Source: Isurus oxyrinchus (lineage: Eukaryota). Taken from it: a stretch of 64,000 nucleotides of DNA. Location of the stretch: the NCBI GenBank assembly GCA_026770705.1, contig JANJGN010000071.1:1240001-1304000 (forward strand), written 5' to 3'. The position numbers were made by a program, and so were the translations under genes. Shown piece by piece: positions 11,825-55,328 of the stretch. How positions within the stretch are numbered: position 1 is the stretch's first letter; each line of letters begins with the position of its first letter. The notes under the pieces are model-generated. The model saw nothing but the letters and a program-made list of their open reading frames with translations. It was not told the DNA's origin and did no database searches.

Positions 11825-11867
<43 letters not shown>

Positions 11868-14630: not shown

Positions 14631-14669
14631 GTGAGTTACACAGAATTGAACGTTCTCGTGTTATTAGCT

Positions 14670-15700
14670 CATGGGACGTGGGCATTGTTGACAAGACCAG
14701 AAATTATTGCCCATCTGTAACTGCCCCTTGAGAGGGTGGTGGTGAGCTGCCTTCTTTAACCACTGCAGTCCATGTGGTGTAGGCGCACCCACAGTGCTGT
14801 TAGGGAGGGAGTTCCAGGATTTTGTCCCAGTGATGGTGAAGGAACGGCCGATATAGTTCCAAGTCCCAGGGCAGACCACCACCTCAAGTTCACTTCCAAA
14901 TCACACACCACACTGAGTTGGAACTGTCTTGGTGGAAGAGGTTAAGAGTTTGGAAGGTGCTGTCGAAGGAGCCTTGGTGAGTTGCTGCAGTGCATCTTGT
15001 AGATGGTGCACACACTGCTGCCATTGTGTGCCAGTGGTGGAGGGTATGAATGTTCATGCTGGTGGATGGGCTGTCGATCAAACAAGCTGCTCCTGGATGG
15101 TGTTGAGGTTCTTGAGTGTTGTTGGAGCTGCACTCATCCAGCCAAGTGGAGATTATTCCATCACACTCCTGACTTGTGCCTTGTCGATGGTGGACAGGCA
15201 TTGGAGAGTCAGGAGTTGAATGACTCACCACAGAGTTCCCAGCCTCTTACCCGCATTTGTAGCCACATTATTTCCTGTTGCCGGGCTGTTGCCAGGGCCA
15301 ATAGCCTTTGCTGTATCCAGTATCATCAGCTGATTCCTGATGTCACGTGGAGTCAATCGAATTGTCTGAAAGCTGACATCTGTGATGCTGGGACCCTCTG
15401 GAGGAGGCCGAGATGGAGCATCCACTCAGCACTTCTGGCTGAACATGGTTGCCAATGCTTCAGCCTTGTCGTTTGCACTGATGTGCTGAGCTCCCCCATC
15501 ATTAAGGATGGGGATATTTGTGGAACATCCTCCTCCTGTTAGATCTTTAGTTGTCCATCACCATTCATGACTGGATGTGGCAGGACTGCAGAGCTTAGAT
15601 CTGACCCGTTGGTTGTGGGATCGCTTTGCTCTGTCTATAGCATGTTGTTTCCGCTGTTTGGTGTGTATGTAGTCCTGTGTGTCACCTCAGCAGCTTGGCA
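14670..15700 (-). mobile_element. LINE 3'/ORF2 fragments
   Basis: Shares sequence with 29870-31830 and 48230-48680; peptide IRLTPRDIRNQL..LDTAKA.GP. Confidence 0.75.
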
Positions 15701-21863: not shown

Positions 21864-24800
21864 GTAATATCATCGTCAGCTCGGATAGATTTATGTTTAA
21901 CAGTCTTTGTAAAAGATCATTCTTATCTCTTTATCTCTGTAACCTCCTGCAACTCACCCAAACAACTTCCCAGATCTCTGTGTTACTCCAATTCCGGCCT
22001 CTTGACCATCCCTCGATTCCCATCACTCCAATACTGGCGGCCGGGCCTTCAGCTGCCTGGGGCCTGAGCTCTGGAATTCACTCGCTAAACCTCGGGGATG
22101 GAGGAGATCAGAGGGATTCATTTTACTGACAATCACCACGACCACATCACAGCTGCAGTGAGAATAGACAGAGAGTCCAGCCCTCACACTTCCTGCACAG
22201 TTTCACCATAGCAACCACAATAAGGAAGTAAAATAACTGAAAGTTAAACCGAAGCCAAGCCAGTCAGTGTAGAGAGATGAGATGTTTACACAGTTTCCCT
22301 GTGTATCTTGTAGACACTGTGTTGGGTGGAAGACTGGCTTCACTAAACAGGGTCCTGAGGACCATGAGCCAATGTAGAATGAACTTGTCCACTCCTGTGT
22401 CCAGGATTCTCTTCCATCCATTGTGAAACCTTGGGGAGTTCCTTGTGTGTCCTGTAGATGGTCCACACTGCAGCCACTGTGCCCCAGTGATGGAGGGAGT
22501 GGATATCGAGTCTAGTGGATCTACAAACTATCCAGAGTTAAATATTGATATTTCTCTCCCCAGTTGGACTGTCACAAGAGTGGAAAGGTGACACTCCACG
22601 AGAGGTTGCAGCACAGGAAGGCTCGTGTGTACAGATTCCATGTCATTACAGTTACTCATCAAATTTAGTAGGGAGATCGCGTGTCAGAATCTGGTTGAAA
22701 GGAATAGATGTGAATCCACAGACTAAATGGTCTATAGCCTTTCACTCCGAAGGTCACAGTCACAGGGATCAAAGATTCCACCATCGGACCCGGCTGTCAG
22801 GAGACCTGAAAGATGGCGACTGTTCCCTGATTATAAATAACTTCAGACGGGAAGATGCGGGACCTTATTTTTTCAGAATAGAATTTGACAATGGTCCGAG
22901 CCATAACTATTACCCTGTAACCCAGCTTCACGTTTCTGGTAAGTGCTGTGTTATAATTACTCAACAATTCACATTCAACACTCGATGGGAAATAACACAA
23001 ACTGTGACGTTTACATATTAACACAAAACACAGCTTACACATCAGACACACTGTCTGATTCTCAATAACCTGGTGATAGCTTCCAGTTCAGTCCTAAAGC
23101 AACCTCTAATACTCACTTTAATATCAATGATGAAAAGCGTTAACTGTATTATCAGGTTACCACACCCATCAATCTCTCCTGTCCTGTTTAAAAGTCTGAC
23201 GTATCGATAAAAGAAAGATGTGCATTTCTGCAGCGCAATTTACCACCTCAGGAGGATCCAAATCCCTTCACAGCCAATGAAATTATTCCTGAATTGTAGT
23301 CACAGATGTTAAACACAGCAGGCAGTTTGTGCACAGCAAGATCCAACAAACCACAAGGTGATAAATCACCCAGATCACTGAGGAAATGAGAAGCCAGTGA
23401 ACTCAAACCTCTGGTCTGATGAAGAGTCATACGGACTCGAAACGTTAACCCTATCTTCCTCTCCACTGATACTGTCAGACCTGCTGAGTCTTTCCAGCAA
23501 TTTTTGTTTTTGTTTCAGATTTCCAGCATCCGCAGTATTCTGCTTTTAACTCCAATCTCTGGTCTGAGCCTCTTCTCTCATCCAGTGTTCTCAATTCACA
23601 TGTCTCGGAGTGAACGTGTATTAAGCTGAGAGACAGAAACACTACTGCCAAAGAGCAAGAAAATCTTTCCTGATCATTGTAACCTCTCAGTTCTGATATC
23701 ATCCTTGTAAAAGTGCTTTCTCTTGTGGGACTGTGGTTTCTATTTGAACTGATGCTTCACGTTATATTTCTCTAAAAGGATCCATTCTCTTTCTGTTAGA
23801 TTTCACAGATAAACCCACGATTTTCCCTGCTGAAATTATTGCAGGAAAGCGTGTGGATGTAAGCTGCACCTTCAACACAACGTGCAATGGAACAGCAGCA
23901 CCTGTCTTGACCTGGGACACTCCCACTGACGTACCTGGATCAGTCTCAAACACTGTAACTCAGCATGGTGTCACTCTGACCTATACTTGTGTTGTGACCC
24001 TGATTCCATCACTCAAACACCACGGACACACTCTCAGCTGCAGAGTGAGATATCCATCTGTTTCATCGGAGCGGACCCTCGTACTAACTGTGCAAGGTAA
24101 TTACATACACTTTCATTCTACATCAGCACTCCCTCAGCGCTGACCCTCTGACAGTGCAGCCCGTTCTCAGTATCCACATTCTCAGACCTCTCTAAGTGCT
24201 TCAAAGTCGATAGAAGTTAATTGATCTTTATTTGATTATTGCTGAATAAAGAGACAAGCTGTCTAAACTTTACATCTCGCACACACCATTCTCCATGGCA
24301 ACACCTCCACCTATCAGAGACCACTTGCCAACCAATCAGCACTCTCTTCCCATTAAGTATAAATTGTTGTTCACTTTCTGTTGGTAATCCTGTGAACGGG
24401 CTTCTTGATTCCTGCCCTGACATCTTAATGTCCCAATGAACAGAACAACTTCCAACAATGAGCTGTGGTTAGTGATTCCTCACATTACATCCAGGGACAC
24501 TGGAGACTATCAGTGTGTGGCAGAGAATGAACATGGAGCAGTGGAGGGATTCATAACCATCACTGTGGAACGTGAGTGTACACAGACTTCAACATCTCTC
24601 GCAGATTCGAACACGACACAAACACCCTCAAACATACACATCTAAGTAGACACATGCAGACACACATATATGACCACACAGAAAGACACACTCACACACA
24701 AACACACTAACACACACTCCCCTGTGGGCTACCTGACCTCCCTCAGTACTGCCCTGGAGAGTTGGCCTGAATTCTGGGATTTGTGTTCCCATTCATATTT

Positions 24801-34305: not shown

Positions 34306-34422
34306 CTAATATCTACAGCAGAGACCACAAGTCTCATTTGGTTCTCTCCAATTACAGCAGTTACAGCAGAATCTGCAGAGCTGCTGTCTGCCCATTCTCT
34401 TCTGGCGCTGCAGCAAGGAGCC
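34306..34422 (-). CDS. HAMP: Hepcidin exon 3 (furin site and mature peptide)
   Basis: Acceptor cctgcttttccag; RQKR; CRFCCNCC...CGLCCRY TAG; candidate AATAAA at 33465-33470 on the minus strand. Confidence 0.95.
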   Translation of the reverse strand, partial: GSLLQRQKRMGRQQLCRFCCNCCNWREPNETCGLCCRY

Positions 34423-37400
34423 CTGGAAAAGCAGGAGGACAATAGGTGAGAACATTCCGGAAAGAAAGAAGGCATCATTTCAATCAAGCGCGTCATTGGA
34501 AGGAGGATGGCGCAATTCTATAGCGCCTTTCCCCTCCTCAGGATGGCCCAAAGTGTTCCACAGCTGAAGGAAGGACTTTTTCTGAAGTGAGCTCACCGCT
34601 GTAATGTAGGAAACGCAGCAGGCAATTCACGCACAGCAAGATCCCACAAACAGAAATGTGATAATGGCCCCGATTTTCAGTTTTTTACCAATGTCAGTTG
34701 AGGGATAAATGTTTGCCCCAGGAAAGCAGACATAACTGCATCCCATCCACCCCGCACCACCCCCTCCACACATACCCCCAACTCATGACGCACTTCATTT
34801 AAATTGTGGTCATGGAATCCTCTACATCCATCTGAGAGGGCAGATGTTGTCTCAGTTTAACATCTCATCTGAAAGACAGCGCCTTCAACAGTGCAGCACC
34901 CCCTCAGTACTGACCCTCCGACTGTGCAGCACTCCCTCAGTACTGACCGTCTGACAATGCAGCACCCCCTCAGTACTGACCCTCCGACTGTGCAGTCCCC
35001 CGCCGGTACTGACCCTCTGACAGTGCAGCACTCCAAGACTGACCGTCTGACAATGCAGCACCCCCTCAGTACTGACCCTCCGACTGTCCTGCCCCCCCGC
35101 CGGTACTGACCCTCCGACAGCTCGGTAATTTCTCAATTACGCCTGGTGGTCCTTTTAATTCAGAGCTGAGAGTTGCAGAGAATCGAGCAGACACCCTGAA
35201 CTGACACTTGCAGTGCAAGTACTGGGAGCGCGCTGGTCATTATCATGCTGCTGTCTGTGGGATCTTACTGTGCGCCAATGGCTGATTCTTTTCCCACAGT
35301 ACATCAGTGACCTCACATGAAAGAAAGAAAGCACTTGATTGTCTGCGAAACAGTTTGGGACGTCCTGATGTGTTGGAAGGCGCTAGAGAAATGCAAGAGT
35401 TGACGTTTCGAGTCCTCATGACCCTTCTGAGGACTCGAAACGTCAACTCTTTTCTTCTCCGCCGATGCTGCCAGACCTGCTGAGTTTTTTCAGGTAATTC
35501 TGTTTTTGTTTTGGATTTCCAGCATCCGCAGTTTTCTTTGTTTTTATAGAGAAATGCAAGTCCTCTTTGTCTTTCACTGGATCCTCTAAGGTGTCTGTTG
35601 ATTAACCAGCCTCTCGGTGTATGATGTAGGCCTGGTTATAAACAGTTAGAAGGATCAAATATCAAAAGTGCTTTGGCTGACAGTCAAACCGATTGTGCAT
35701 TCGGAGAGATTAGATACGGTCTGCGCACAATGACTCCAGTCTCTGGCACTGACTGCCGCCTGGGGTCTCCCTTCCACATAACACTCACAACTTGCATTTA
35801 CACAGCGCCTCTGCCATTGCAAAATGTCCCAGCCCACATTACCGGAGCGTAAATCAGAGAGAAGTCTAACACTGAGTCACATATGGAGATATTAGGTGAC
35901 CAAAAGCTTGGTCATAGATGTCAGTTTTTAAGGAGCATCTTAAAGGAGAGAGAGAGAGAGAGGCAGAGAGGTTAAGGGAGGGTATTCCGGAGCTCAGGGC
36001 CCCAGGCAGCTGAAGGCACGGCCACCAATGGTGGAGCGATGGGAATCAGGGGGACCCGGGAGATGCAGGAATTTCAGAGATTTTGGAGGAACATCGGGAC
36101 CGGAGGAGGTGTTCTCCTGCTCCATATCTCTCTCTCTCTTCCTCTCATCCACTCCTCCTCTCCCTGTCTCTCTCTCTCCTACTCTTCCGCTCAATTGCCC
36201 TCTCTCCCAATCTTTCTCTCCTCTCTCCCTTTTCCTGTCTCTCTCCCTCTCTCTCTCCCCTGTCTCCTTCTCCCACTCTGTATCTCTCCCTCTCTCTCAC
36301 ACTATTTTTGTACCTTTCGCTCACTCTGTAACTCTCCCTTTCCTGTTAATTTCTCTCTCTTGGACAATCTCTCTTCCCTTTTCACTTTCCCTCACTCTGC
36401 ATCTCTTCTTTAATTTCTCCCTCTGTCACTCTCTCCCACCTATGTTCTTTCCCTTTCACCCCTCCCCGTCCCACTCTCTGTCTCTCTCTTCCAATCCCTC
36501 CCTCCCTCATTCCATCCCTCTCTCCGACTCTCGACTCCCAGCCTCTCTTTAACCCACTCCCAGGCTGGATCAGTCTCCCTCTCACTATTCCCGGCGTGGG
36601 TTACATTTAAAATTCCTGTGGGGATATGTTCAGTTCCTTGGAATTGCCTCTTCCCAGCTTTGCAAAAAAAAGGGGGCGGCGGGGGGCTCGATTTCAAACA
36701 TGCCTCCTGAGTATAACCGAGACAGACTGCCACTGAAATCAGCTTGAAATCAGAAAACTTTCTGTGGAAGAAACGAGCAGGGAGAAACCTTAAAATAAGG
36801 AATGAATTTCCACCTACCGTGTCCGGGGAATCCACAGATTTCTCAATCGTCGAAGAACCTAAAGCAGTGTCAACCTGCAAAAAGAAAGAATTTATCAGGG
36901 AGAAAGTGAGAGGAGGATTGAGGGAGAGGGAGAGAGAGAGAGAGAGGTACAGGAGAGAGAGGGGGAGGAGGACAGACTTGCATTTCTCTAACGCCTTTCA
37001 CCACATCCCAAAGCATTTCACAGCCACTGAAGGATGTTTTTGAAGTGCACTCACACTGTAGGAAATGTGGCAGCTGATTTGTGCACAGCAAGATCCCACA
37101 AATAGCAATGTGATCATGGCCTAGATCATCTGTTTTTGGTGATGTTGGGTGAGGGATAAATATTGGTCCCAGGACACCGGGGAGAGCACCCCCTGCTCTT
37201 CCTCCAAATAGTGGCTGTGGGATCTTTCACACCCGCCCGAGAGGGCAGACGGGGGACTCAGTTTAATGTCTCATTCAACATTGTTGTGCTCCCTCAGTAC
37301 TAACCCTTTGACACTGCAGCACTCCCTCAGTACTAACCCTTCGATAGTGCTGCACTCCCACAGTATTGTCCCTCCGTCAGTGCAGCGCTCCCTCAGTACT

Positions 37401-38832
37401 GACCCTCCGACAGTGCAACACTTCCACAGTACTGACCCTGTAACAATGCAGCACTTCCTCAGTACTGACCTCCGACAGTATAGCACTCACTCAGTACTGT
37501 CCCTCCAATAGTGCAACACTTCCACACTACTGACCCTCTGACAGTGCAGCACTCCCTCAGCACGGAGTGTTGACCGACGTTATGGGACTGAATTCCCTGG
37601 AGTGAGACTCAGACCAGAGATTTAGGTAGGGTTGTTCCGGCTGGAGGAGGTTACAGAGATAGGGAGGGTTGTAGAGGCTGTAGGAGGTAACAGAGATAGG
37701 GAGGATTCTAGAGGCTGTAGGAGGTTACAGAGATAGGGAGGGTTGTAGGGGCTGTAGGAGGTTACAGAGATAGGGAGGTGAGTAGGGGCTGTAGGAGGTT
37801 AAAGAGATGGGGGGGTTGTGGGGGCTGGAGGAGGTTACAGAGGTAGGGAGGGTTGTAGAGGCTGGAGGAGGTTACCAAAATAGATACTGTTGTAGGGGCC
37901 ACAGTAGGTTACAGAGATAGGGAGAGTTATAGTGTGGAGAGGACGTTATAGAGTTCATGAGCATTGTAGGGGCTGGAGGAGGTTACAGTGATTCTGAGGG
38001 TCGTGGGGCCTGGAGGAGGTTACAGAGATAGGGAGGGTTGTAGGGTCTGGAGGAGGTTACAGAGATAGGGAGGGTTGTAGGGTCTGGAGCAGGTTACAGA
38101 GATAGGGAGGGTTGTAGGGTCTAGAGGAGTTTACAGTGATCATGAGTGTTGTGGGGCCTGGGGGAGGTTACAGAGATAGGTAGGGTTGTAGGGGCTGGAG
38201 GAGGTTACAGAGATAGGGAGGTTTATAGGGGCTGGAGGAGGTTACAGAGATAGGGAGGGTTGTAGGGGCTGGAGGAGGTTACGGAGATAGGGAGTGTTGT
38301 AGGGGCTGGAGGAGGTAACAGAGATAGGGACAGTTGTAGGGGCTGGAGGAAGTTACAGAGATAGGGAGGGTTGTAGGGGCTGGAGGAGGTTACAGATATA
38401 GGGAGGGTTGTAGCGGCTGGAGAAGGTTACAGAGATAGGGAGGGGTGTAGGAGCTGGAGGAGGTTACAGAGATAGGGAGCGGTGTAGGGGCTGGAGGAGT
38501 TTACAGAGATAGGGAGGGTTGTACGGGCTGGAGGAGGTTACAGAGATAGGGAGTCGCTGAGGAGGGATTGAAAACAAGAATGAGAATTTCAGGGGAAATG
38601 ACAGAAGGAAATGATGTTAAATTCATAGAGGGCGACAATATTAAAGGCACGAACATAATAATATCAAACTGCGGAAGTGACCAGTCTATCTGGGTGGTGG
38701 ACGTAGAGTCATGTGCAAGAAACACCTCACCCAGAGGGACATCTCTTAGCTTACCCTCGACAAGGAGAAGAAGTGACTCAGCTGCAGGGAGAGCAGCAAA
38801 GTCAGAGTGAACAAGACAAGTCGCCATTTCAT
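34306..38832 (-). CDS. HAMP: Hepcidin-family antimicrobial/iron-regulatory peptide precursor, 3 exons, 83 aa (88 aa from the ATG at 38847)
   Basis: Exons 38832-38755, 36874-36818 and 34422-34306, all phase 0 with GT-AG: MKWRLVLFTLTLLLSLQLSHFFSLSR|VDTALGSSTIEKSVDSPDT|GSLLQRQKR-MGRQQLCRFCCNCCNWREPNETCGLCCRY*. Signal peptide, furin site and the 8-Cys CxxCCxCC...CGxCC pattern are all present. Confidence 0.92.
34885..35120. repeat. 33-bp minisatellite in hepcidin intron 2
   Basis: Tandem units; forms the end of the inverted duplication. Confidence 0.9.
35398..35546. mobile_element. Penelope-like short insertion with a 14-bp TSD (tagagaaatgcaag)
   Basis: TSD at 35384-97 and 35547-60; absent from the inverted copy at ~46435. 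Confidence 0.85.
36818..36874 (-). CDS. HAMP: Hepcidin exon 2 (prodomain)
   Basis: ttctttctttttgcag|...ACG|gtaggt; 57 nt, phase 0-0. Confidence 0.85.
37640..38552. repeat. 37-bp minisatellite (ggaggaggttacagagatagggagggttgtaggggct) in hepcidin intron 1
   Basis: More than 20 tandem degenerate units; a reverse-strand piece at 39297-39408. Confidence 0.95.
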
Positions 38833-38847
38833 CTGGGAGCTTCCCAT
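38755..38847 (-). CDS. HAMP: Hepcidin exon 1 (signal peptide)
   Basis: (MGSSQ)MKWRLVLFTLTLLLSLQLSHFFSLSR, then AGG|gtaagc. Confidence 0.85.
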
Positions 38848-38918: not shown

Positions 38919-39130
38919 CTTATACCTGAAACACTTGAAGGGGACAGCCGCGGGTGGGTTGCTGTGTGGTATCACACCCATTTCTGGATATTGCAGTGTC
39001 GATGTTCCCTGTCCCACTGGCCTGGGACCAGCAGTAAGGTCACTGGGACATTGACTGTCTGGCGCCGAGAACTATCAGTCCCTCCGCAACGCCCTTCACC
39101 TTGTGCAAATATGTGTTCATATTGACGCAA
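38919..39130 (-). promoter_or_regulatory. Hepcidin proximal promoter: TATA, BMP-responsive GGCGCC, C/EBP-like sites
   Basis: TATAAG (minus) at 38919-24; GTCT-GGCGCC at 39057-66; TTGTGCAA at 39101-08; TGACGCAA at 39123-30. Confidence 0.55.
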
Positions 39131-40089: not shown

Positions 40090-41436
40090 TGATACTGTAA
40101 CTGCCTCTTTGGTTTCATTCAGCTGAATCTTCAGCTCTTCAGTCTCTTCCTTGTATCTCTTGCCTTCCTCCTGGAACATTGGACATGGTTGGGTCTTCCC
40201 TGCCAACTGTTTCTTCAGTTTGCTCAGAGCGGCACAGAATTCGCTTTCTTTCTCTTCAGGATTTTCCAGTGGAACCAACTCTGACCTGAGGGACACTTGC
40301 AGCCTGTGAGGATGCTTCAATTCTTCAAACTCATTCCGAGATACACTCTCATATTCCCCCAGCAACTCAGCAACTCCTCCAGTGAAACATTTCAGAGCAG
40401 CTGAGCTTGGTTTTCTGGAACCAGTCTCGGCCCAGAAGACTAGGGCCCTCACCTGTCGCTATGATCACTGGAAGCTGGGCTGTCTGCTGCCTGTAGGACA
40501 CAGGTACTGGGATGAGGTCCTTTCCCTGTATGGATTCTCCAGTGTGTGTCTTCAGCTGATCCATTGTTTGCTCTAAATTCAGCATCTGGGTTCCTTCATT
40601 TAGCTGTTTAAATGTGGGCTCTTCCACCACTGTGTCTGAGGCTCCCGTATCTGCCCCATTACTAGTGGCTGCCCATTCACTTGGGTTGTGATGGTTATAG
40701 GTTCAGTTTTTACCACTGTGACATTGGACAGGGAATAGACATCGGTATCAGCAGCTTCAGGCTCTGTGATATTATTCACTTCCATCATGTTGGTGCACTG
40801 TCTGATGGGCTGTCTCGATTTCACCCTGCATTGCTTTATTACCTGCCCCTTTCTTGTGGCAGTGATGGCATTCTGCCCCCTTGAACCTGCAGGTGTCCAG
40901 TACGTGCTCAATGCCCCCCACATCGAGAACAGGCCAACTTCGGAGTTGCTGCTGAAATACTCCCACGAAGCCTTTTAGTTTCTGGAGCGGCAGAGACTGT
41001 CTCTCGCTTGGCGGCTGTCTCTCTCCCTCTCTCTCCAGTTTGAGCCTCACGCCCGGTGGTTGTTTCCTGTCCCAGCTGAGGACTGGCGCCATGTTGTACA
41101 TCCTGTAAATCTCGCCAGTCTCTCCCAGCACTTTCCATGCCTGGCGCTATTTCCATGGTGCGCTTCAAATCGATGTCGGCTTCTGCGAGTAAACGGCTCT
41201 GAATGGCGTTGGGGTGAACGACACAAACCAATCGGCCCCGCAACATGTCATTGAGTGTGTCTCCGAGGTCCCAGTGCTCAGTCACCTGCTTCCACTTCAC
41301 TGTATAGGTTGCGATGGACTCTCCCTGGGCCCTTACTCTGGAGTTAAACTTAAACCTTTTCATTATTACCCACGGCTTCAGCTGAAAACACATCTTCATG
41401 AGGTCGACTAATTGGTGAAAAGATTTAGAATTGGGT
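40090..41436 (-). mobile_element. Ty3/Gypsy gag-protease fragment, degenerate, no LTR at the 5' junction
   Basis: KSF.QLV.L...PWVI.KRFKFN.R...GESIA...LNDMLR.RLVC; CxxC zinc-knuckle remnants; VNGQP.../PSLLGRDW. Confidence 0.85.
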
Positions 41437-42592
41437 GTAATACACGTCACTGTCTTCAGCTCTGAGACTGTCAATCCTCACCGAACAATTCTTCCCTTCC
41501 AAGTCGCCGATTATTTTAGCACGTCCCACGAATGTGGCCATCCCATAGTTGGGATCTTTGGTATATGTGATGATATATTTCCATCTATACCAATATTTAT
41601 ACCAAGCTCCGTGCAGTGCTGTGTAAGAGTGGGAAGGAAAGTCAAAGCTACACGGAATAACCACACAAGAGCTGCTGATGGCCCTCCGAGGCAGCGCCTT
41701 CATAGACCATTCCTCTGACGTCACTCCTGAAAGGCAACAAGGGAGGGGACTGAACATCAAAAAGCAGAATATTACTTCAATTGAGAGAGTCTACAGAATG
41801 CGGTACAGAGGGATCTGGGTGTCCTTGTACATGAATCACAGAAAGTCAGCATTCAGGAACAGCACGGAATGAGGAAGGCAAGTGGAATGTTGGCCTTTAT
41901 TGCAAAGGGATGGAGTATAAAAGGAGGGAAGTCTTGCTACAACTGTACAGGGCGTTGGTGAGATTGTATCAGGAGCAGTGTGTACAGTTCTGGTCTCCTT
42001 ACTTAGGGAGGGATAGACTCTGCATTGGAGGCAGCTCAGAGGAGGATCACTGGGCTGATTCCTGGGATGAAGGGGGTTTGTCCTGTGAGGAAATGTTGAG
42101 CAGGTTGGGCCCTGTATCCATTGGAGTTTAGAAGAATGAGAGGTGATCTTATTGAAACATATAAGATTCTGAGGTGGTGGGGGGTTTGACAGGGTGGATG
42201 CTGAGGGGATGTTACCCCTTGTGGGGGAATCCTGTGAAGCAATAAGGATGTTTTACTGCATTAAAGGTGCTGTATAAATGCACTGTCATTCCTATTGAAA
42301 CAAGCTCTCTGATGCACAAACAGAAAATGCTGGAAAAACTCAGCAGGTCTGACAGCATCTGTGGAGAGAGAAACAGAGTTGGTGTTTCGAGTCCGTATGA
42401 GACTTTTGCTTTTGCTATATTCTCTGACTTGCTATTCACTCACTCTCTGTGTGATCACTAACCCTGTTCTCTAAAATTAAATGTTCACTTCCTCACTCCA
42501 GGAAAGAATCCAATTCCCTGAGTTCCGATCAGTAATGAATTTGTACCTTGCAGCAAGCTGATGAAGATCAGTATCAGACCGACCTCTCCCAT
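41437..42592 (-). pseudogene. Divergent MAG/Siglec-like gene D: leader exon plus V-set exon truncated at the F strand
   Basis: Leader 42592-42547 MGEVGLILIFISLLQ G|gtacaa. V exon from 41726: GVTSEEW...SCVVIPCSFDFP...HGAWY...GDLEGKNCSV...AEDSDVYY, then gag sequence. Confidence 0.85.
41790..42230 (+). mobile_element. CR1-type LINE 3' fragment
   Basis: EYKRREVLLQLYRALVR..LE.CVQFWSPY-like peptide. Confidence 0.8.
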
Positions 42593-43950: not shown

Positions 43951-44720
43951 GAACTGTCGTAATTCAGATGATGTTTGAAATTAGCAACATGCCTCGTGTA
44001 ACATTCTATATCATCAGCTCAATATAACCAGATTAGTCTTGTACGTTTCACTTCACTGCAAATTGTTCATGGTTTCATTTCCTTGTTAACCAGGCTCATG
44101 TGATCACTATTTTTAAATAATGTTTGTTATTTGGAACAAGGGGCCATGCCTGAACAGATAACTGTAGGATCAAGCAGCTGGGTTTTTTCTTGAACCTTAC
44201 TTCATTCTGTTGTTTGCTGCTGGACATGAGATCATTAATGTGTGAATGTAGAATCGAAGTCACCTCAGTGAACAGCAGCATTGGTTGAACAGCCTGATCT
44301 GCAATAAGAACTGCTGAACACAATGTCCATTCAGAACAGCTCGGTCCCCGATCAGAGAAACAGCCTCAGACAGAACCAACTGACGCTGGAATCCATACAA
44401 TTCATCAACGTGTTGGGAGTTAGTTTGATGTCGGAGATGGAGTGTTACTGGGAAGGAGGGAACCCGTCAGGATGAACAGCTCGATGTACGACAAGGAAAG
44501 GATGAGCTAAGAGGGGTTGGTCACGGACAGACGGAGCGTGTGAAGACTCAACAAGCTAATGGCAGGTGAAGAGCTGGAAAGGTGTCTTTTCAACACAAGG
44601 TTTAGACACAGAACTCGATGTTTGATCGGGTATTTCAAACCAGAGAAACTCTTTACAGGGTGAATGGACCTTGTCAATAATCCATCCAGCCAACCTCGCC
44701 TGGAGATTAGTCCAATATTA

Positions 44721-46915
44721 GACACTAAACCGAGACCCCCGTCTGCCCTCTCGGGCGGGTGTGAAAGATCCCACAGCCACTATTTGGAGGAAGAGCAGGG
44801 GGAGTTCTCCCCGGTGTCCTGGGACCAATATTTATCCCTCACCCAACATCACCAAAAAGCAGATGATCTAGGCCATGATCACATTGCTATTTGTGGGATC
44901 TTGCTGTGCACAAATCAGCTGCCACATTTCCTACAGTGTGAGTGCACTTCAAAAACATCCTTCAGTGGCTGTGAAATGCTTTGGGATGTGGTGAAAGGCG
45001 TTAGAGAAATGCAAGTCTGTCCTCCTCCCCCTCTCTCTCCTGTACCTCTCTCTCTCTCTCTCCCTCTCCCTCAATCCTCCTCTCACTTTCTCCCTGATAA
45101 ATTCTTTCTTTTTGCAGGTTGACACTGCTTTAGGTTCTTCGACGATTGAGAAATCTGTGGATTCCCCGGACACGGTAGGTGGAAATTCATTCCTTATTTT
45201 AAGGTTTCTCCCTGCTCGTTTCTTCCACAGAAAGTTTTCTGATTTCAAGCTGATTTCAGTGGCAGTCTGTCTCGGTTATACTCAGGAGGCATGTTTGAAA
45301 TCGAGCCCCCCCCAACTTTTTTTTGCAAAGCTGGGAAGAGGCAATTCCAAGGAAGTGAACATATCCCCACAGGAATTTTAAATGTAACCCACGCCGGGAA
45401 TAGTGAGAGGGAGACTGATCCAGCCTGGGAGTGGGTTAAAGAGAGGCTGGGAGTCGAGAGTCGGAGAGAGGGATGGAATGGGGGAGGGAGGGATTGGAAG
45501 AGAGAGACAGAGAGTGGGACGGGGAGGGGTGAAAGGGAAAGAACATAGGTGGGAGAGAGTGACAGAGGGAGAAATTAAAGAAGTGATGCAGAGTGAGGGA
45601 AAGTGAAAAGGGAAGAGAGATTGTCCAAGAGAGAGAAATTAACAGAAAAGGGAGAGTTACAGAGTGAGCGAAAGGTACAAAAATAGTGTGAGAGAGAGGG
45701 AGAGATACAGAGTGGGAGAAGGAGACAGGGGAGAGAGAGGGAGAGAGACAGGAAAAGGGAGAGAGGAGAGAAAGATTGGGAGAGAGGGCAATTGAGAGGA
45801 AGAGTAGGAGAGAGAGAGACAGGGAGAGGAGGAGTGGATGAGAGGAAGAGAGAGAGAGATATGGAGCAGGAGAACACCTCCTCCGGTCCCGATGTTCCTC
45901 CAAAATCTCTGACATTACTGCATCTCCCGGGTCCCCCTGATTCCCATCGCTCCACCATTGGTGGCCGTGCCTTCAGCTGCCTGGGGCCCTGAGCTCCGGA
46001 ATGCCCTCCCTTAACCTCTCTGCCTCTCTCTCTCTCTCTCCTTTAAGACGCTCCTTAAAAACTGACATCTTTGACCAAGCTTTTGGTCACCTAACCCTAA
46101 TATCTCCATATGTGACTCAGTGTTAGACTTCTCTCTGATTTACGCTCCGGTAATGTGGGCGGGGACATTTTGCAATATCAGAGGCGCTGTGTAAATGCAA
46201 GTTGTGAGTGTTATGTGGAAGGGAGACCCCAGGCGGCAGTCAGTGCCAGAGACTGGAGTCATTGCGTGCAGACCATATCTAATCTCTCCGAATGCACAAT
46301 CGGTTTGACTGTCAGCCAAAGCACTTTTGATATTTGATCCTTCTAACTGTTTATAACCAGGCCTACATCAAACACCGAGAGGCTGGTTAATCAACAGACA
46401 CCTTAGAGGATCGAGTGAAAGACAAAGAGGACTTGCATTTCTCTAGCGCCTTCCAACACATCAGGACGTCCCAAAGTGTTTCGCAGACAATCAAGTGGTT
46501 TTTTTCTTTCATGTGAGGTCACTGATGTACTGTGGGAAAAGAATCAGCCATTGGCGCACAGTAAGATCCCACAGACAGCAGCATGATAATGACCAGCGCG
46601 CTCCCAGTACTTGCACTGCAAGTGTCAGTTCAGGATGTGTGCTGGATTCTCTGCAACTCTCAGCTCTGAGTTAAAAGGACCACCAGGCATAATTGAGAAA
46701 TTACCGAGCTGTCGGAGGGTCAGTACCGGCGGGGGGGCAGGACAGTCGGAGGGTCAGTACTGAGGGGGTGCTGCATTGTCAGACGGTCAGTCTTGGAGTG
46801 CTGCACTGTCAGAGGGTCAGTACCGGCGGGGGACTGCACAGTCGGAGGGTCAGTACTGAGGGGGTGCTGCATTGTCAGACGGTCAGTACTGAGGGAGTGC
46901 TGCACTGTCAGAGGG
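44721..46915 (+). pseudogene. Inverted partial duplicate of the hepcidin gene (intron 1 end, exon 2 at 45118-45174, intron 2)
   Basis: Reverse complement of ~34885-37270; exon 2 identical with intact splice sites; exons 1 and 3 not seen. Confidence 0.9.
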
Positions 46916-47404
46916 TCAGGGCTAAGGGAGTGCTGCACTGATGGAGGGTCAGTACTGAGTGAGTGCTGCACTGTCAGAGGGTCAGTGCTAAGGGATTGCT
47001 GCACTGTTGGAGGGTCAGTACTGAGTGAGCGCTGCACTGATGGAGGGTCAGTTCCGAGGGAGTGCTGCACTGTCAGAGGGTCAGTGCTAAGGAAGTGCTG
47101 CACTGTCAGAGGGTCAGTGCTAAGGAAGTGCTGCACTGTACAGAGGGAGTGTGAGACTGACAGAGGGTCAGTAATGAGGGAGTGTGAGACTGACAGAGGG
47201 TCACTATTGAGGATGTGCTGCACAGTCGGGGGGGTCAGTACTGAGGGAGCACTGCACTGCCATAGGTGGTTTCTTTCAGATGACATGAGAGAGAGGGTTA
47301 AACCCACTGAGACAAGACTGACACTAATGAGGCTGCTCAATAATTTAACCCTATCAGTGCCAGTAAATAATGTGAGGATGTCTTCTGTTTCCATTTCTCT
47401 GTAG

Positions 47405-48890: not shown

Positions 48891-50338
48891 GTACAGGAGC
48901 TGTTTACACTCACTCCAAAGCTTCTATCTCAGTGTGTAGACAACACATGTCCCAGATTCCCAGCCAGGTTACCCACTGATTTGTACCTGTGGAGTCAGCA
49001 ATGGTTCAGTATCATGCTGTCTCTCTGTTATGTCACAGCAACTGGTAAAGGCTGTTGTTTAAAATCCCAGAGGGAAACTTTAAACAACTGTCATAACCTA
49101 TATTTCCCAGTGGAATGTTTGAGATGCAGCTCTAAATTCAGGAATAAGACCATCAGTTCTTGAGATGGGTTTATATCAAACTACATGAGACATTTATTAA
49201 TTTTCACAAGTTAATCATATGCACATGGCTACAAGCTAGTACTATCATAACTTTTTAACAAATTCCCAAACTAACGTCCTCTAAGACAACCCATAGACTT
49301 TAAGCAGATTCCAAGCGAAGCATTTTCACCTCACAAATTCCAAATGAGGTTCCTTTCACTTTGGTTCCTTTGCAGACAGGTGTAGGCTTACAGCTGCTTT
49401 GATGTTACAAGCCTCTGCTCTGCACACACAAAACTGCTCAAGTTATACCCAGCTCTTCTCTTTGAATGTAAATTCTCATTGTATCATCAGGACCTTTGAT
49501 CTCCATCTCTTCTAACTATAAATCCCGTTTCATAGTATCAATTTTATTAGTAATATAAACATTGATTGGTTTAAGAATTCACTCCCAGGCTTTGAATCCT
49601 CCTTTTAAAAATGCAATATGCCTCTTTACCTCTTTGTTTACATCTCAAAACTACTATACATAAAAGTACCCAGACCGGCTGGCTTTAATCCAATTAAAAC
49701 ACACACACACACACCCACAGACTAAACCTCTGTTTAAAAAGACAATTTCCAATTACAATACATACATTAATAGATTCATAACGCTCAGTCTCTGACCCTT
49801 CATCTCTCTCTCTCTCTCTCAACCTCTCTCTGATTACAAGATTCATGTTATTGAGCCTCACACCAGGCACCTGAGTGCAGAATCCAAGCCGACACTCGCC
49901 AGAGCCATTACCGAGGGAGTGCGAGACTGACAGAGGGTCAGTACTGAGGGAGTGCTGCACTGTCAGAGGGTCAGTACTGAGGGAGTGTTGCACTGTCAGA
50001 GGGTCAGTACTGAGGAAGACCTGTACTGTCGGAGGGTCAGTACTGAGGGAGCGCTGCACTGCTGGAGGGTCAGTACTGAGGGAGCGCTGCACTGTCGGAG
50101 GGTCAGTACTGAGGGAGTGCTGCACTGTTGGATGGTCAGCATTGAGGAAGTGCTGCACTATCGAAGGGTCAGTACTGAGGGAGCACTGCACTGCCATAGG
50201 TGTTTTCTTTCATAAGACATGTGAGAGAGGGTTAAACCCACTGACCCACGACTGACACTAACGAGGCTGCAGAATATTTTAACCCTATCAGTGCCAGTAA
50301 ATGATGTGAGGATGCCTTCTGTTTCCATTTCTCTGTAG

Positions 50339-50587
50339 GGTAAACAGAACGTGCTGATTACTGAGCCCCGGAACACAACCAGAGACACAACTAGCGAGGG
50401 GGAGACCCCAGCTCCCCAGGGTGTCTCTGAATGTGCAGTGGGAGGCAATGCTGGACATGGGAACCCCGACAATCCTGACGAGTTTCTCTACGCCAATCCC
50501 CAAGTCTTCAGGGTGCCCAGTGGTGATGGGTCTGTCCACAGGGAAGAGCAGACGGAATACGCACAGATCAGATTCAAGAGAAACTGA
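50339..50587 (+). CDS. Siglec-like terminal cytoplasmic exon (copy 3): FLYANP and TEYAQI
   Basis: Open phase-0 frame to TGA. Confidence 0.78.
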   Translation, partial: GKQNVLITEPRNTTRDTTSEGETPAPQGVSECAVGGNAGHGNPDNPDEFLYANPQVFRVPSGDGSVHREEQTEYAQIRFKRN

Positions 50588-50786
50588 GCGTGAAAAAGGC
50601 AGAGGTGGTCAGGAGGTTTGTGGATGGTGGCAGGGATGAAGATTCTTGGGAACATGAGACAACCCACTGGGGGAGAGGGGGAGAGAGGGAGGAAGGGACT
50701 GAATGGGTCTGTGGTTGGTGTGGTTTGGAATGAAATGTTTCCCCAGTGACGACTTGATGCTGAGTCATTGGGGACAGAGATTCAGT

Positions 50787-50966
50787 NNNNNNNNNNNNNN
50801 NNNNNNNNNNNNNNNNNNNNNNNNNNNNNNNNNNNNNNNNNNNNNNNNNNNNNNNNNNNNNNNNNNNNNNNNNNNNNNNNNNNNNNNNNNNNNNNNNNNN
50901 NNNNNNNNNNNNNNNNNNNNNNNNNNNNNNNNNNNNNNNNNNNNNNNNNNNNNNNNNNNNNNNNNN
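50787..50966. other. Assembly gap (others at 60700-60879 and 61666-61837)
   Basis: N runs, located where the paralogue has microsatellites. Confidence 0.99.
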
Positions 50967-53900
50967 ATTAACTGGCTTTGTGAAATCAGCTTTTTGTCAC
51001 CTGTCCCTAATACCTCATTATGTGTCTCTGAGATGGATTTATATGTAGGTAACAATCCCCTGAAGAGATTTGGGACAGTTTGTTACATTAAGTGTGCCAT
51101 ATAAATGCAAGTTGTTGCAGGAAAGTTGATTTGCCTCGATTCAGAATGGTAATTCGGAGGGTCCATCGACAGGGCGTGTGTGCAACAGCCTCGCAATAAA
51201 TGCATTGCACGGCAACAACTAAGCATGTCCTTTGATGCTGATGCATCCCAGTACTGCTGTGTGGACACATCACAACCGAGGGACTGCCTGACTGCGTGCA
51301 GCCAACATGGCCGAATAGTAATTAGCAGAAATGTGATGTCACTGAACTTTGTTGACATTTCAGAAAGTGCTTTCTGAATTCTGCAACTTGTTTATTCTGT
51401 GATAGATTACAAGAAGCCTTTGCATTTTCTATAATATTACATTTATTGTCACAAGGGATTGAAATGCCCAGACACCACCACCTGGAAGTTCACCTCCAAG
51501 ACACACATCATCCTGATTTTGAAATATATCGCCATTCCTTCACTGCCACTAGGGTCAAAATCTTGGACTTCCTTCTCTAACTGCATTGTGGGTGTACCTA
51601 CACCACATGGACTGCAGAGGGTCAGGAAGGCAGCTCACCACCACCTTCTCAAGGTAATTAAGGATGGGCCATAAATGCTGGCCTAGCCAGTGATGCCCAC
51701 TTCCCATGGAAGAATGAATATATAAAATATAAAGTTGGAACAAATGAATGAAGTTATAGCACAAATAGAGATTAATGGGTACGATAAGATGGACACTGCA
51801 GAGAGTTGGTTGCAAAGTGACCAAGGTTGGAAATTGAAAATTGAAGGATATTTGGAATCTTTGAAAGGATAGGAAAAATGAAAAGGAGGTGGGGTAGCTC
51901 TCTTAATAAAAGATGAGACCTGTAAAGTAGTGAGAAATGATTTTGGCTCAGATGTCAAGATGCACAGTCAGTTTGGGTGAACATAAGGAATTGCAAGGGA
52001 AAGAAATCACTGGTGGGTTGGTTTATACTCCCCCCTGAATGTAGTTACACTGCAGGGGTAGATTATAAATCAATACATGAGGAGGTTTATGAGAAAGGCA
52101 CCACATTAATCATGGGAGTTTTCAATCGTCATATGGATTAGCCAAATCAGATTAGCAAATGTAGCTTTCAGCGAGGTTATACAGATTGTATTCAGGACAG
52201 TATTTTAGAACAATCCAACATGGAACCAACCAGGGAAGAGGCTGTTTTAGTCCTGGCAATGTTTAATGAGACAAGACTAATTAACATCTCATTGTAAAGG
52301 ACCCTCAAGGGAAGAGTAATCATACCGTGTTGAAATTTAATATTCAGTTTAGAAACTTGGGTCTGAAACTAGTGTCATAAACTTAACTAAAGGCAAATAC
52401 AAGGGTTAAAAGCAGAGTCAGCCCAAGTAGAGTGGGACAGCAGGTTAAAGGGGGCGGGGGGGTGGTAGATGAGGAGTAACAGGCATCTAAAGAAATCTTT
52501 CATAAATGCCAATGAAGATATATTCCAGTTAGAAAGAAAGAATCTATAAGAAGGATGGAGCATCGGTGGCTAACTCAGGAAGCTAAGGACGGTATCCAAT
52601 TGTGAGATAAAGCCGGCAATGTTGGGATGCTTAGTGATAGGCTGCAGATTGGGAATATTTGAGAAACCAGAAAAGTGAGGGGAGAAATATAAGGAGGCAG
52701 AAATGATGATATGAGAGTAAACTAGCAAGAACCATAAACAATGACAGTGAGATGTTGTACATTAAAATAAGAGAGAAGCTCCAGTAATAATGGGACACAT
52801 AGAAAATCAGACTGGGGAATTAATAATGGGAAACAAGGAAATGACAGAGACTTTCAACAAGAATTTTGTGTCTGTCTTCACAGTAAAAATCTCTAAAACC
52901 ATCCCAATAGCAGGAGAAAGTCACGGTGCAACAAGGAGGGAGGAACATAAAACAATCACTATCACCAGAGAAAAAGTATTAAGAAAACTAATGAGACAAA
53001 TGCTGACAAGTCCCATGGAGCAGACGGCCTGAATGTGAGGGTCTGAAAGGAAATGGCTGCAGAGACGGTGGATGCATTGGATGTAATCTTCCAGAATTCC
53101 TTAGATTATGGGAAGGTCCCAGTGGATTGGAAAAACATAAATAAAATATCTCTGTTCAATAAAGGGAGGAGGCAGAAAGCAAGAAACTACAGGTCAGTTA
53201 GTCTAATATCTGTCATTGGGAAAATACCAGAATTCATTATGAAGGAGGGAGCAGCAGGACGTTTAGAAAACCATAATTCAATCAGACAGAGTCAACATGG
53301 GTTTGTGAAAGGGATATCATGTTTGAAAAAATAATTAGATTTCCTCGAGGATGTAACAAGTGGATTGGATAAAGGGGAACCTGTAGATGTGGTGTATTAG
53401 GGACTATGACACAGCCAAGGGTAAAGGCTGAGTTGTTCAAATCCCAGAGGGAAAATTGAAACAACTGTCATAACCCAATTTTGCAATTTGTAATTTCGAG
53501 ATGAAGACTCTGAATTCAGTAGGAATAAGACCACGGAGTCTTGTGGGGGTTTTTCAAAATAAAAAAAAATTATTATTAAAACAAATTTAACACATATGCA
53601 CAGCTATAAATTATGACTACAATAACTTTTTAACAAATCCCCAAATGAAAAACTCTCAGATAAATCTCTACTATGGCAATAGTCACCCATAGGCATTATG
53701 GAGACACCAGGCAAAGCACATTTGACATAGGAATTCTGAATGAGGTTCCTTTGCAAGTTGGTTGGAGGCTACAGGCTGGTTCGGTCTGAAATGCTCCTGC
53801 CTCACACACACAAACTCCTTCCTTTATATAGCTAGCTTTCCCTTTGAATGTAAATTTTCCATTGTATCACTCGGTCTTCTGAACTCCACCTCTTCTAACA

Positions 53901-54738
53901 ATAAAACCCCCTTTCATAGCACCAATTTCATTAATAAGTTCAAGAAAAAACACATCTTTTGGATCCTTCTAACTAGGTGCAAGATTTTACCCCCTGTCTG
54001 GAATGGTTTATTCAACAATTGCAAATGAACACTTTACTGTTCTCCTCACAATTCACCCAATTAACATCTCAAAACTACTAAACATCAAAACACACAGACC
54101 AGCTGGCTTTAATCCAATTAAGACACACACAGACACACACCTATACATGGACCACCACTAGAATTCTATTTTAAAATATAATTTCCAAGCACATTTTACA
54201 CACAAGTATCTCTTCATGACATTGCATTTCCGAAAGGCATTCGATAAGGTGCCACATCAAAGGATACTGCACAGGGTGAAATTGGATGGTGTTGGGGGTG
54301 ATATATTAATATGGATAGAGGACTGGCTAACTGACAGGAAACAGAGAGCCAGGATAAATGGGTGATTTTCAGCTTGGTAAACTGTAACTTGTGGATAGCC
54401 ACAGGGATCAGTGCTGAGGCCTCAACTATTCACAATCTACATTAGTGACTTGGATGAAGGGACTGACAGTACTGTAGGAAGATTTTCTGACTGTGTGGTT
54501 AAGATAGGTAGGAAATATATAAACTGAGCAGGAAAGCAAGTTGTGAGGAGGACACAAAGAGGCTGTAGAGCGAGATAAATAGTTTCAGTGAGTGGATAAA
54601 AAAAAGAGTGGATGGAATATAAGGAATGAAAATGCCAGGGTGTCCAGCTGATCCTACTTGTTCTGTTCTTATATTCTTATACAGACACAGGGTTTACTGA
54701 CAGTGCACAGCAAAGTGCTCTTCTCTCAGTTTGCTCCA

Positions 54739-54878
54739 ACTTCCTCATTTTGACTCACAGTGACACATCAGCTCTTTCTAATTAAATACACAGATAGATC
54801 AGCACAGGAAGAGGTCATTCAGCCCAAACAGAACGTGTGGGCAGTTCCTCCCCAGGTGAGCAGTCGGACAGGTCCTGG
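54739..54878 (+). promoter_or_regulatory. Gene C promoter (ETS and AP-1) and non-coding exon 1
   Basis: ACTTCCTC at 54739, TGACTCA at 54751, donor gtaagt at 54879. Confidence 0.6.
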
Positions 54879-55328
54879 GTAAGTAACGGAACGATTGGAA
54901 TTCACTTCCACAATCAACACCGTCCTTTGTTGATGTTGTGACTTTATAAAGACAGATTCCAATGATTGATGCCTTTGAAAGATTTCTACTGCTTATTGAG
55001 ATCTGGGTGTGGGGCTCAAGTCTGTTGTACAGAACATCTTTCTAGCTCAAGGGATGAGACAAGTGCAGAGACATGAGATTTGGGATGTCCTGAGCAGGTG
55101 AAAGGTGCTATAGAAATGCAAGTCCTTCATTGTTTTTCTTTCTTAAAGCCTAGTAACTCTCTGCAGAGCACCTATCATCCCGCAGAGTATCAAATTAGTC
55201 TGTGATGACATTGTCTAAAAGAAGTTCAGATCTCTCGACAGCTGTCAGACAAGAGGTGAGGTCTCATTAACTCCTTTCTCTTTCACAGCTTGAGAGTGAG
55301 AAGCTAATGGAACATCTGCGAGTGGACA

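What the first reader, a model, noticed from the sequence alone, without database searches (positions are those of the whole stretch)
34306..38847. Complete hepcidin-family gene hidden in the receptor cluster
Three short phase-0 exons spread over 4.5 kb of minisatellite-rich introns assemble into an 83-aa prepropeptide with a signal peptide, an RQKR furin site and an 8-Cys mature domain. The exon layout matches vertebrate HAMP. The ORF track never gives the assembled peptide and shows exons 1 and 3 only in other frames, so automated annotation could miss it.
Basis: partly seen in the sequence, partly recalled or inferred. Interest (0 to 1): 0.85.

Follow-up and report, generated by a model that had tools for sequence, protein, structure and literature searches.

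The report
Intact shark hepcidin gene copy
The three small exons do encode an intact hepcidin-family peptide, lying among Siglec immune-receptor genes in what looks like a shark genome. It is one of many such copies in this genome, it lacks the usual iron-hormone N-terminus, and I could not test whether it is expressed.

Summary
On the minus strand there are three exons: 38847-38755, 36874-36818 and 34422-34306. They have canonical GT/AG borders and both introns are phase 0. They encode a signal-peptide-like start, a pro-region, an RQKR convertase site and a 29-residue peptide with 8 cysteines.

The only correction is length: 88 aa from the ATG at 38847, and 83 aa only from the second ATG.

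Exon 3 alone passes Pfam's Hepcidin gathering score (31.6 bits against 27, E 2e-7). The cysteine motif occurs once in all six frames and never in 300 resampled windows.

The neighbouring genes are Siglec-family. The gene sits in a tandem duplication of about 49 kb. Earlier notes of this scan report many sister copies on other DNA of this genome.

The mature peptide (MGRQQL-CRFCCNCC-NWREPNET-CGLCCRY) lacks the His and hydrophobic N-terminal motif of ferroportin-binding hepcidins. It also has an 8-residue loop carrying an N-E-T sequon. A TATA box and a GGCGCC-CAGAC element resembling a BMP-responsive element lie upstream.

Expression and splicing were not tested. Protein searches were blank. The joined peptide was not searched, by instruction.

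Verdict: a real, intact new member of a known family, of modest interest.

The parts
39057..39066 (-). GGCGCC immediately followed by CAGAC, 214-219 nt upstream of the ATG. It resembles a BMP-responsive element plus a SMAD-binding element.
   Evidence: Only 2 GGCGCC sites occur in the 64 kb window. The human HAMP BRE1 and BRE2 are both GGCGCC (PMC3879105; PMC3203580). This is a motif match only; its function was not tested.
38919..38924 (-). TATAAG box about 75 nt upstream of the ATG. There is no upstream ATG between it and the start codon.
38755..38847 (-). Exon 1 coding part, 31 codons. It has basic residues (K7, R9), a 12-residue hydrophobic core (LVLFTLTLLLSL) and ends in SLSR. It encodes the signal peptide and the start of the pro-region. 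The donor is AGG|GTAAGC.
36875..38754 (-). Intron 1, 1880 nt, phase 0. It contains a 37-bp minisatellite (25 copies) and 33-bp repeats.
36818..36874 (-). Exon 2, 19 codons, pro-region only (VDTALGSSTIEKSVDSPDT). The acceptor is TTTTTGCAG| and the donor is ACG|GTAGGT.
34423..36817 (-). Intron 2, 2395 nt, phase 0. It contains GA-rich low-complexity sequence and 33-bp repeats.
34306..34422 (-). Exon 3 coding part. It encodes the end of the pro-region (GSLLQ), the RQKR convertase site, the 29-aa mature peptide and the TAG stop.
   Evidence: Pfam Hepcidin 31.6 bits against a cut-off of 27. Weak match to bass hepcidin 1S6W.
34309..34395 (-). Predicted mature peptide MGRQQLCRFCCNCCNWREPNETCGLCCRY. 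It has 8 Cys, an 8-residue loop containing an N-E-T sequon, and net charge +2.
   Evidence: Compared by eye with the sequences printed in PMC5665920 and PMC7915682.
33465..33470 (-). The only AATAAA/ATTAAA on the gene strand within 1 kb after the stop, about 840 nt downstream and beyond a GT/CA microsatellite. The true 3' end is unknown.
44717..46947 (+). Partial inverted duplicate of the gene, 97-98% identical. It covers parts of both introns and an identical exon 2 copy at 45118-45174. It has no copy of exon 1 or exon 3.
41428..41760 (-). Siglec-family V-set exon 2.6 kb upstream of the gene on the same strand. This is the nearest receptor-like neighbour.
   Evidence: Pfam V-set 25.1 bits, just under the cut-off of 26. 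PDB matches to sialoadhesin, Siglec-5 and MAG, E 7e-11 to 7e-9.

Best explanation
This is an intact paralogue of the hepcidin (HAMP) family in a cartilaginous-fish-type genome. It is one unit of a tandemly amplified block of Siglec and hepcidin genes.

Inferred mechanism:
- Transcription starts about 30 nt downstream of the TATAAG box.
- Two phase-0 introns are removed.
- The 88-aa prepropeptide enters the secretory pathway through its N-terminal signal peptide.
- A furin-type convertase cuts after RQKR and releases a 29-residue cationic peptide held by four disulfides.

The six residues before the first cysteine (MGRQQL) lack the His-3 and hydrophobic-4 motif of ferroportin-binding hepcidins. 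The cysteine core (CRFCCNCC...CGLCCRY) is almost that of the defence-type sea bass Hamp2. I therefore think it most likely acts as a host-defence type hepcidin, not as the animal's ferroportin ligand.

Shown here: the gene anatomy, family membership, the Siglec neighbourhood and the duplication. Inferred: expression, processing, disulfide pattern and function.
For: - Exons, splice sites, phases and translations.
- Pfam Hepcidin above the gathering score on exon 3 alone.
- The bass hepcidin structure is the only PDB sequence match.
- The cysteine motif is unique in the window and absent from 300 resamples.
- The exon-to-domain layout equals the conserved HAMP layout (PMC3325200).
- TATA box, no upstream ATG and a strong start context.
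- Sea bass Hamp1 is QSHLSLCRWCCNCC... and Hamp2 is HSSPGGCRFCCNCC...CGVCCRF. Per that paper's title, only Hamp1 regulates ferroportin (PMC5665920).
- The human ferroportin-binding epitope is DTHFPICIF (PMC7915682).
- Siglec-family V-set and Ig exons lie on both sides.
- Window 1-12.7 kb is about 94% identical to 49.0-61.7 kb.
- Earlier scan notes, unchecked by me, report sister copies of the same design elsewhere in this genome, several of them strongly transcribed.
Against: - There is no RNA evidence for this copy.
- No homologue was recovered from the large protein collections, so there is no cross-species conservation test.
- The upstream GGCGCC-CAGAC element is the kind that gives HAMP its iron/BMP response. 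Leu-6, Cys-7 and Phe-9 of the binding epitope are kept. An iron-hormone role is therefore not excluded.
- No canonical poly(A) signal lies within about 840 nt of the stop.
- In a multi-copy array, a young intact copy may be silent.
Confidence: 0.6

Rival explanations
1. It is the functional iron-regulatory hepcidin, or one of several equivalent copies. On this reading, shark ferroportin recognises a different N-terminus, and transcription is controlled by BMP/SMAD signalling as in mammals.
For: - GGCGCC followed by CAGAC lies 214-219 nt upstream of the ATG, and it is one of only two GGCGCC sites in 64 kb. The same motif forms both BMP-responsive elements of human HAMP.
- The N-terminus has the canonical length of six residues before Cys-1. 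It keeps a hydrophobic residue at 6, Cys at 7 and Phe at 9.
- The position beside Siglec genes matches HAMP-MAG-CD22 in human (own knowledge).
- Earlier notes say this peptide form is the common one in this genome (unchecked).
Against: - His-3 and the hydrophobic residue 4 shared by human DTHFPI and bass QSHLSL are replaced by Arg and Gln.
- The loop is twice the usual length and carries a glycosylation sequon.
- One 6-bp motif is weak evidence and was examined post hoc.
- No STAT site (TTCNNNGAA) lies in the 450 bp upstream.
Confidence: 0.2
2. It is an intact-looking but silent or decaying duplicate. A recent segmental duplication carried the gene along, and it contributes little or no peptide.
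For: - The gene sits in a tandem duplication of about 49 kb, about 94% identical.
- Beside it lies a partial inverted duplicate that keeps only exon 2, so hepcidin copies are visibly being broken up here.
- Earlier notes describe damaged and chimeric copies in the same genome (unchecked).
- No RNA holder is on record.
- There is no nearby poly(A) signal.
Against: - The reading frame, both splice-site pairs, the start context, the TATA box, the convertase site and all eight cysteines are intact.
- Several runs guessed to be RNA hold 7-61% of the stretch's words, though this was not resolved.
- Sister copies are reported as very highly transcribed (unchecked).
Confidence: 0.17
3. It is a chance assembly of short ORFs and not a gene.
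For: Each exon is short. Exons 1 and 2 have no database match on their own.
Against: - Pfam scores above its curated cut-off on exon 3 alone.
- There were 0 motif hits in 300 resamples.
- Three in-frame pieces with canonical splice sites appear in the family's known order.
Confidence: 0.01

Closest known systems
Human hepcidin / HAMP (hepcidin-25, [25 protein letters not shown]; PMC9779829, PMC7915682)
   Same: - Three exons with the same division of signal, pro-region and mature parts.
- A basic convertase site directly before the mature peptide.
- Eight cysteines in the same order.
- Six residues before Cys-1, with a hydrophobic residue at 6 and Phe at 9.
- A GGCGCC motif upstream.
- Siglec-type neighbours (HAMP-MAG-CD22 on human 19q13 is from my own knowledge).
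   Different: - There is no Asp-Thr-His (ATCUN) start, no His-3 and no Phe-4.
- The loop between Cys-5 and Cys-6 is 8 residues against 4, and it contains N-E-T.
- The mature peptide is 29 aa against 25.
- The introns are about 2 kb and full of minisatellites.
- The gene is multi-copy, not single.
Sea bass Hamp2, the defence-type teleost hepcidin (HSSPGGCRFCCNCCPNMSGCGVCCRF; PMC5665920; PDB 1S6W)
   Same: - The CRFCCNCC core is identical.
- The C-terminus is nearly identical (CGLCCRY against CGVCCRF).
- It lacks the Hamp1 QSH motif.
- It belongs to an expanded gene family, as teleost hamp2 does (PMC6240063).
   Different: - Teleost Hamp2 arose within ray-finned fishes, so the likeness is probably parallel and not orthology (inference, no tree built).
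- The loop is 8 residues against 5.
- Antimicrobial activity was not tested here.
Sea bass Hamp1, the iron-regulatory teleost hepcidin (QSHLSLCRWCCNCCRGNKGCGFCCKF; PMC5665920)
   Same: The cysteine framework is the same. There are six residues before Cys-1, Leu at position 6 and an aromatic residue at position 9.
   Different: His-3 and Leu-4 are replaced by Arg and Gln, and the loop is longer.
Nurse shark plasma hepcidin (detected by LC-MS/MS; PMC9207270)
   Same: It shows that hepcidin exists and circulates in an elasmobranch. That paper also found no whale shark orthologue of it when it compared with the whale shark protein database, which suggests shark annotations can miss hepcidin.

Membership tests
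Hepcidin family (Pfam PF06446) | Profile HMM score at or above the curated gathering score | tested here: met
   31.6 bits against 27, E 2e-7, on exon 3 alone, profile positions 24-52 of 53. The joined peptide was not scored, by instruction.
Hepcidin family (Pfam PF06446) | Eight cysteines in the order C-x2-CC-x-CC-loop-C-x2-CC | tested here: met
   CRFCCNCC-NWREPNET-CGLCC. It is unique in six frames and appears 0 times in 300 resamples. The loop is 8 residues, against 4 in human and 5 in bass.
Hepcidin family (Pfam PF06446) | RX(K/R)R proprotein-convertase site directly before the mature peptide | tested here: met
   RQKR precedes MGRQQL. The motif is as described in PMC3325200.
Hepcidin family (Pfam PF06446) | N-terminal signal peptide | tested here: inconclusive
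   By inspection only: basic K7 and R9, a 12-residue hydrophobic core, and small residues at S-L-S before R31. No signal-peptide predictor was available.
Hepcidin family (Pfam PF06446) | [quoted passage not shown] | tested here: met
   against PMC3325200. The coding exons are 93 and 57 nt here, against 87 and 78 nt in teleosts. All are multiples of three, so the phase is the same.
Hepcidin family (Pfam PF06446) | Spliced, expressed transcript (liver in other vertebrates) | not testable with these tools
Hepcidin family (Pfam PF06446) | Beta-hairpin fold with four disulfides | tested here: inconclusive
   The single-sequence AlphaFold2 model has pLDDT 71 and pTM 0.38 and is helical. It is not trustworthy for a disulfide-rich 38-mer without an alignment.
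HAMP orthologue by position | Linkage to MAG/CD22-type Siglec genes | tested here: met
   V-set exons at 9857-10321, 22545-23018 and 58813-59277 hit Pfam V-set and Ig_CD22 and PDB Siglec-5, MAG and CD33. The exon at 41428-41760 hits sialoadhesin, Siglec-5 and MAG. The mammalian gene order is from my own knowledge. USF2 was not looked for.
Iron-regulatory (ferroportin-binding, Hamp1-type) hepcidin | N-terminal motif with His at 3 and a hydrophobic or aromatic residue at 4 (DTHFPI, QSHLSL) | tested here: not met
   MGRQQL has Arg at 3 and Gln at 4. Leu-6, Cys-7 and Phe-9 are kept.
Iron-regulatory (ferroportin-binding, Hamp1-type) hepcidin | BMP-responsive element (GGCGCC) in the promoter | tested here: inconclusive
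   GGCGCC+CAGAC lies at 39066-39057 and is one of 2 such sites in 64 kb. The motif is as in human BRE1 and BRE2. No functional or conservation test was made.
Iron-regulatory (ferroportin-binding, Hamp1-type) hepcidin | Binds ferroportin and causes its internalisation | not testable with these tools
   This needs an experiment. No ferroportin sequence of this species was at hand.
Teleost Hamp2 (defence-type) hepcidin | Orthology with the teleost hamp2 clade | not tested
   No set of homologues could be gathered, so no tree was built. The likeness rests on the CRFCCNCC and CGxCCR motifs only.

The most novel reading that the evidence does not exclude
Shark long-loop hepcidins that lack the ferroportin-binding N-terminus may represent the ancestral, defence-type state of the family, or a glycosylated hepcidin with a different target. 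They would have been co-amplified with Siglec receptors as one immune gene block while already under BMP/SMAD control. If so, the iron-responsive promoter would predate the ferroportin-binding peptide.
Probability: 0.1. Interest if true: 0.65.

Novelty: new member of a known kind. Interest (0 to 1): 0.35.

Why it matters
Hepcidin is the master iron hormone of vertebrates, and little has been published on it in cartilaginous fishes. My searches of the open library found only a plasma-proteome mention (PMC9207270).

An intact copy with a non-canonical N-terminus, a long loop carrying a sequon and a BMP-element-like promoter motif gives a concrete peptide and promoter to test. Its position in an amplified Siglec block adds to that. 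These tests would address when hepcidin's iron-hormone function arose relative to its defence function.

For annotation, it is a reminder that genes with three very short exons and repeat-filled introns are easily missed. In itself it is one more family member, and the scan has already noted many sister copies in this genome.

Tried and rejected
After that I sent no letters of 36474-36509, nor of their copy near 45.5 kb, to any external search tool. One search was cut to stay clear of them. Local scripts read the whole window file, but only on the closed machine.
- **The look-up of sequencing runs**: no holder is on record as RNA. The shares of 0.07-0.61 in runs guessed to be RNA could not be interpreted without laying reads.
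- **The search for homologous proteins**, twice, with the contiguous 57-aa in-frame ORF ending in exon 3: no candidate shared three words. A third try with the 38-aa exon was too short for the tool, and I did not pursue it.
- **The search of protein representatives** with exon 3: the only hit was a 577-aa repeat ORF (P0001), not a hepcidin. A 38-aa query cannot reach significance for distant relatives against 1.8 billion proteins.
- **AlphaFold2** on a single sequence: a helical, low-confidence model that I rejected as uninformative. No fold search was made.
- **ESM Atlas**: best score 0.76 to an unnamed plant cluster. No lead.
- All searches were exon by exon and by reference.
- **Selection on the orphan exon 2:** I considered this and rejected it. 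The exon is identical between the copies, but so are 452 nt around it.
- **Second hepcidin gene in the window:** rejected. There is no other copy of exon 1 or exon 3 and no other C-x2-CC-x-CC motif.
Full report
**What is there**

Read on the minus strand, the region holds three short exons.
- Exon 1 starts with the ATG at 38847 and runs to 38755. It has 31 codons (MGSSQMKWRLVLFTLTLLLSLQLSHFFSLSR) and is followed by GTAAGC.
- Exon 2 is 36874-36818. It has 19 codons (VDTALGSSTIEKSVDSPDT), follows a pyrimidine tract ending in CAG, and is followed by GTAGGT.
- Exon 3 is 34422-34306. It has 38 codons plus TAG (GSLLQRQKRMGRQQLCRFCCNCCNWREPNETCGLCCRY) and follows TTTTCCAG.

Exons 1 and 2 are 93 and 57 nt long, so both introns are phase 0.

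The total is 88 residues from the ATG at 38847.

The introns are 1880 and 2395 nt and are full of tandem repeats. These are a 37-bp unit x25 at 37623-38553 and 33-bp units at 37289-37560 and 34888-35120.

**More than chance**

The motif C-x2-CC-x-CC-x(3-9)-C-x2-CC occurs once in the six-frame translation of the window. It occurs 0 times in 300 first-order Markov resamples, and even the short C-x2-CC-x-CC is unique.

**Family**

Everything was done exon by exon and by reference.
- Exon 3 alone scores 31.6 bits on Pfam Hepcidin (PF06446). That is above the curated cut-off of 27, with E 2e-7, and covers profile positions 24-52 of 53.
- The only solved-structure sequence it matches is bass hepcidin 1S6W. 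The match is weak (E 0.26) but aligns cysteine for cysteine.
- The division of labour among the exons is the one described as strongly conserved for HAMP in fish and mammals, along with the RX(K/R)R site and eight cysteines (PMC3325200). Exon 1 encodes the signal peptide and the start of the pro-region, exon 2 encodes pro-region only, and exon 3 encodes the rest of the pro-region plus the mature peptide.
- Teleost coding exons 1 and 2 are 87 and 78 nt, also multiples of three, so the intron phases agree.

**Surroundings**

- The ORF-sized exons at 9857-10321, 22545-23018 and 58813-59277 (+) hit Pfam V-set and Ig_CD22. They also hit the solved structures of Siglec-5, MAG, CD33 and Siglec-8 (E 1e-15 to 1e-13).
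- An exon at 41428-41760 on the gene's own strand, 2.6 kb upstream, hits sialoadhesin, Siglec-5 and MAG. In that alignment, Gln stands at the place of sialoadhesin's Arg in YNFR.
- The 'receptor cluster' is therefore Siglec-family. This fits the HAMP-MAG-CD22 neighbourhood of mammals (gene order from my own knowledge).
- Window 1-12,700 is about 94% identical to 49,019-61,665. The gene therefore lies inside a tandem repeat unit of about 49 kb.
- Earlier notes of this scan list many further hepcidin copies in Siglec surroundings on other DNA of the same genome. Some were followed up as strongly transcribed, some as damaged, and one as a chimera. I could not check those notes, and I count them as leads only.

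**A broken sister copy**

Positions 34882-35397 and 35547-37274 recur inverted at 46947-46432 and 46445-44717, at 97-98% identity. That copy holds an identical exon 2 at 45118-45174 (+) but no exon 1 and no exon 3.

The identity of exon 2 is not a sign of constraint, because 452 nt around it are identical too.

**Control regions (motif level only)**

- TATAAG lies at 38924-38919, about 75 nt before the ATG, with no intervening ATG.
- GGCGCC followed directly by CAGAC lies at 39066-39057. Only two GGCGCC sites exist in the 64 kb, which has a CpG observed/expected ratio of 0.31.
- GGCGCC is the sequence of both BMP-responsive elements of the human hepcidin promoter (PMC3879105). It is a direct Smad1/5 site, and a HAMP promoter mutation of it impairs the BMP response (PMC3203580).
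- No TTCNNNGAA STAT site lies within 450 bp upstream.
- The only AATAAA on the gene strand after the stop is about 840 nt downstream, at 33470-33465.
- I looked for these motifs after the fact and tested none of them.

**The peptide**

Cleavage after RQKR would release MGRQQL-C-RF-CC-N-CC-NWREPNET-C-GL-CC-RY, which has 29 residues and net charge +2. I compared it by eye with three sequences printed in papers:
- human [25 protein letters not shown] (PMC7915682);
- bass Hamp1 QSHLSL-C-RW-CC-N-CC-RGNKG-C-GF-CC-KF (PMC5665920);
- bass Hamp2 HSSPGG-C-RF-CC-N-CC-PNMSG-C-GV-CC-RF (PMC5665920).

The comparison shows four things.
- The N-terminus has the canonical length of six residues. It keeps a hydrophobic residue at 6, Cys-7 and Phe-9.
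- His-3 and the hydrophobic residue 4 are Arg and Gln, so the ATCUN/ferroportin-type start is absent.
- The CRFCCNCC core and the CGxCCR(F/Y) end are those of Hamp2, the type that does not regulate ferroportin (title of PMC5665920).
- The loop is 8 residues long, against 4-5, and contains the sequon N-E-T.

I could not test that.

**What could not be done**

- The decisive test, spliced reads, failed. 
- The run search found no holder on record as RNA.
- Two word-index protein searches were blank. The exhaustive representative search returned only a spurious repeat ORF.
- The Atlas gave nothing.
- A single-sequence AlphaFold2 model was helical and low in confidence.
- As a result, I have no cross-species conservation, no copy-specific expression and no check of whether public annotation holds this gene.

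**Reading**

- I put about 0.9 on 'intact hepcidin-family gene'. That rests on the Pfam score, the motif statistics and the gene anatomy.
- I put about 0.7 on 'expressed'. That is inferred from the gene's intactness, its TATA box and the unchecked reports on sister copies.
- Among functions, I favour a defence-type, Hamp2-like peptide over the ferroportin ligand by roughly three to one. The promoter motif keeps the iron-hormone reading alive.
- It is a new member of a known family in a lineage where the family is barely described, and one of many copies already noted by this scan. Interest is therefore modest.

Noticed in passing
window 1-12700 and 49019-61665: Tandem segmental duplication with a period of about 49 kb at about 94% identity. 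It carries Siglec-like genes. A third related V-set and C2-set pair at 22343-24127 is 93-95% identical to both.
   Followed up: partly
window 44717-46947 (+): Inverted partial duplicate of the hepcidin gene. It keeps an identical exon 2 (45118-45174) and parts of both introns but has no exon 1 or exon 3. It may be a leftover of rearrangement or an assembly effect.
   Followed up: partly
window 41428-41760 (-): Siglec-type V-set exon in which Gln aligns with sialoadhesin's Arg in the YNFR strand. The open frame ends right after it and overlaps a 188-aa ORF (40911-41474) that has no Pfam match. It may be a non-lectin or decayed Siglec exon.
   Followed up: no
window 12370-12735, 13315-13671, 14339-14731, 61411-61665, 62630-62800 (+): A run of near-identical Ig-domain exons (Pfam Ig_3 and I-set for the first). 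Each is followed by CA/TG-rich microsatellite sequence that reads as 'HTHTH' ORFs. This looks like internal exon amplification within the Siglec-like genes.
   Followed up: no
window 50787-50966, 60700-60879, 61666-61837: Three runs of N, 172-180 bases long. Two of them interrupt Ig-domain exons of the second Siglec-like unit.
   Followed up: no
P0001 (not in the window): The only 'significant' hit of the representative search was a 577-aa ORF made of a tandem repeat of about 60 aa, unrelated to hepcidin. It shows how cysteine- and leucine-rich repeats can produce false hits for very short queries.
   Followed up: yes
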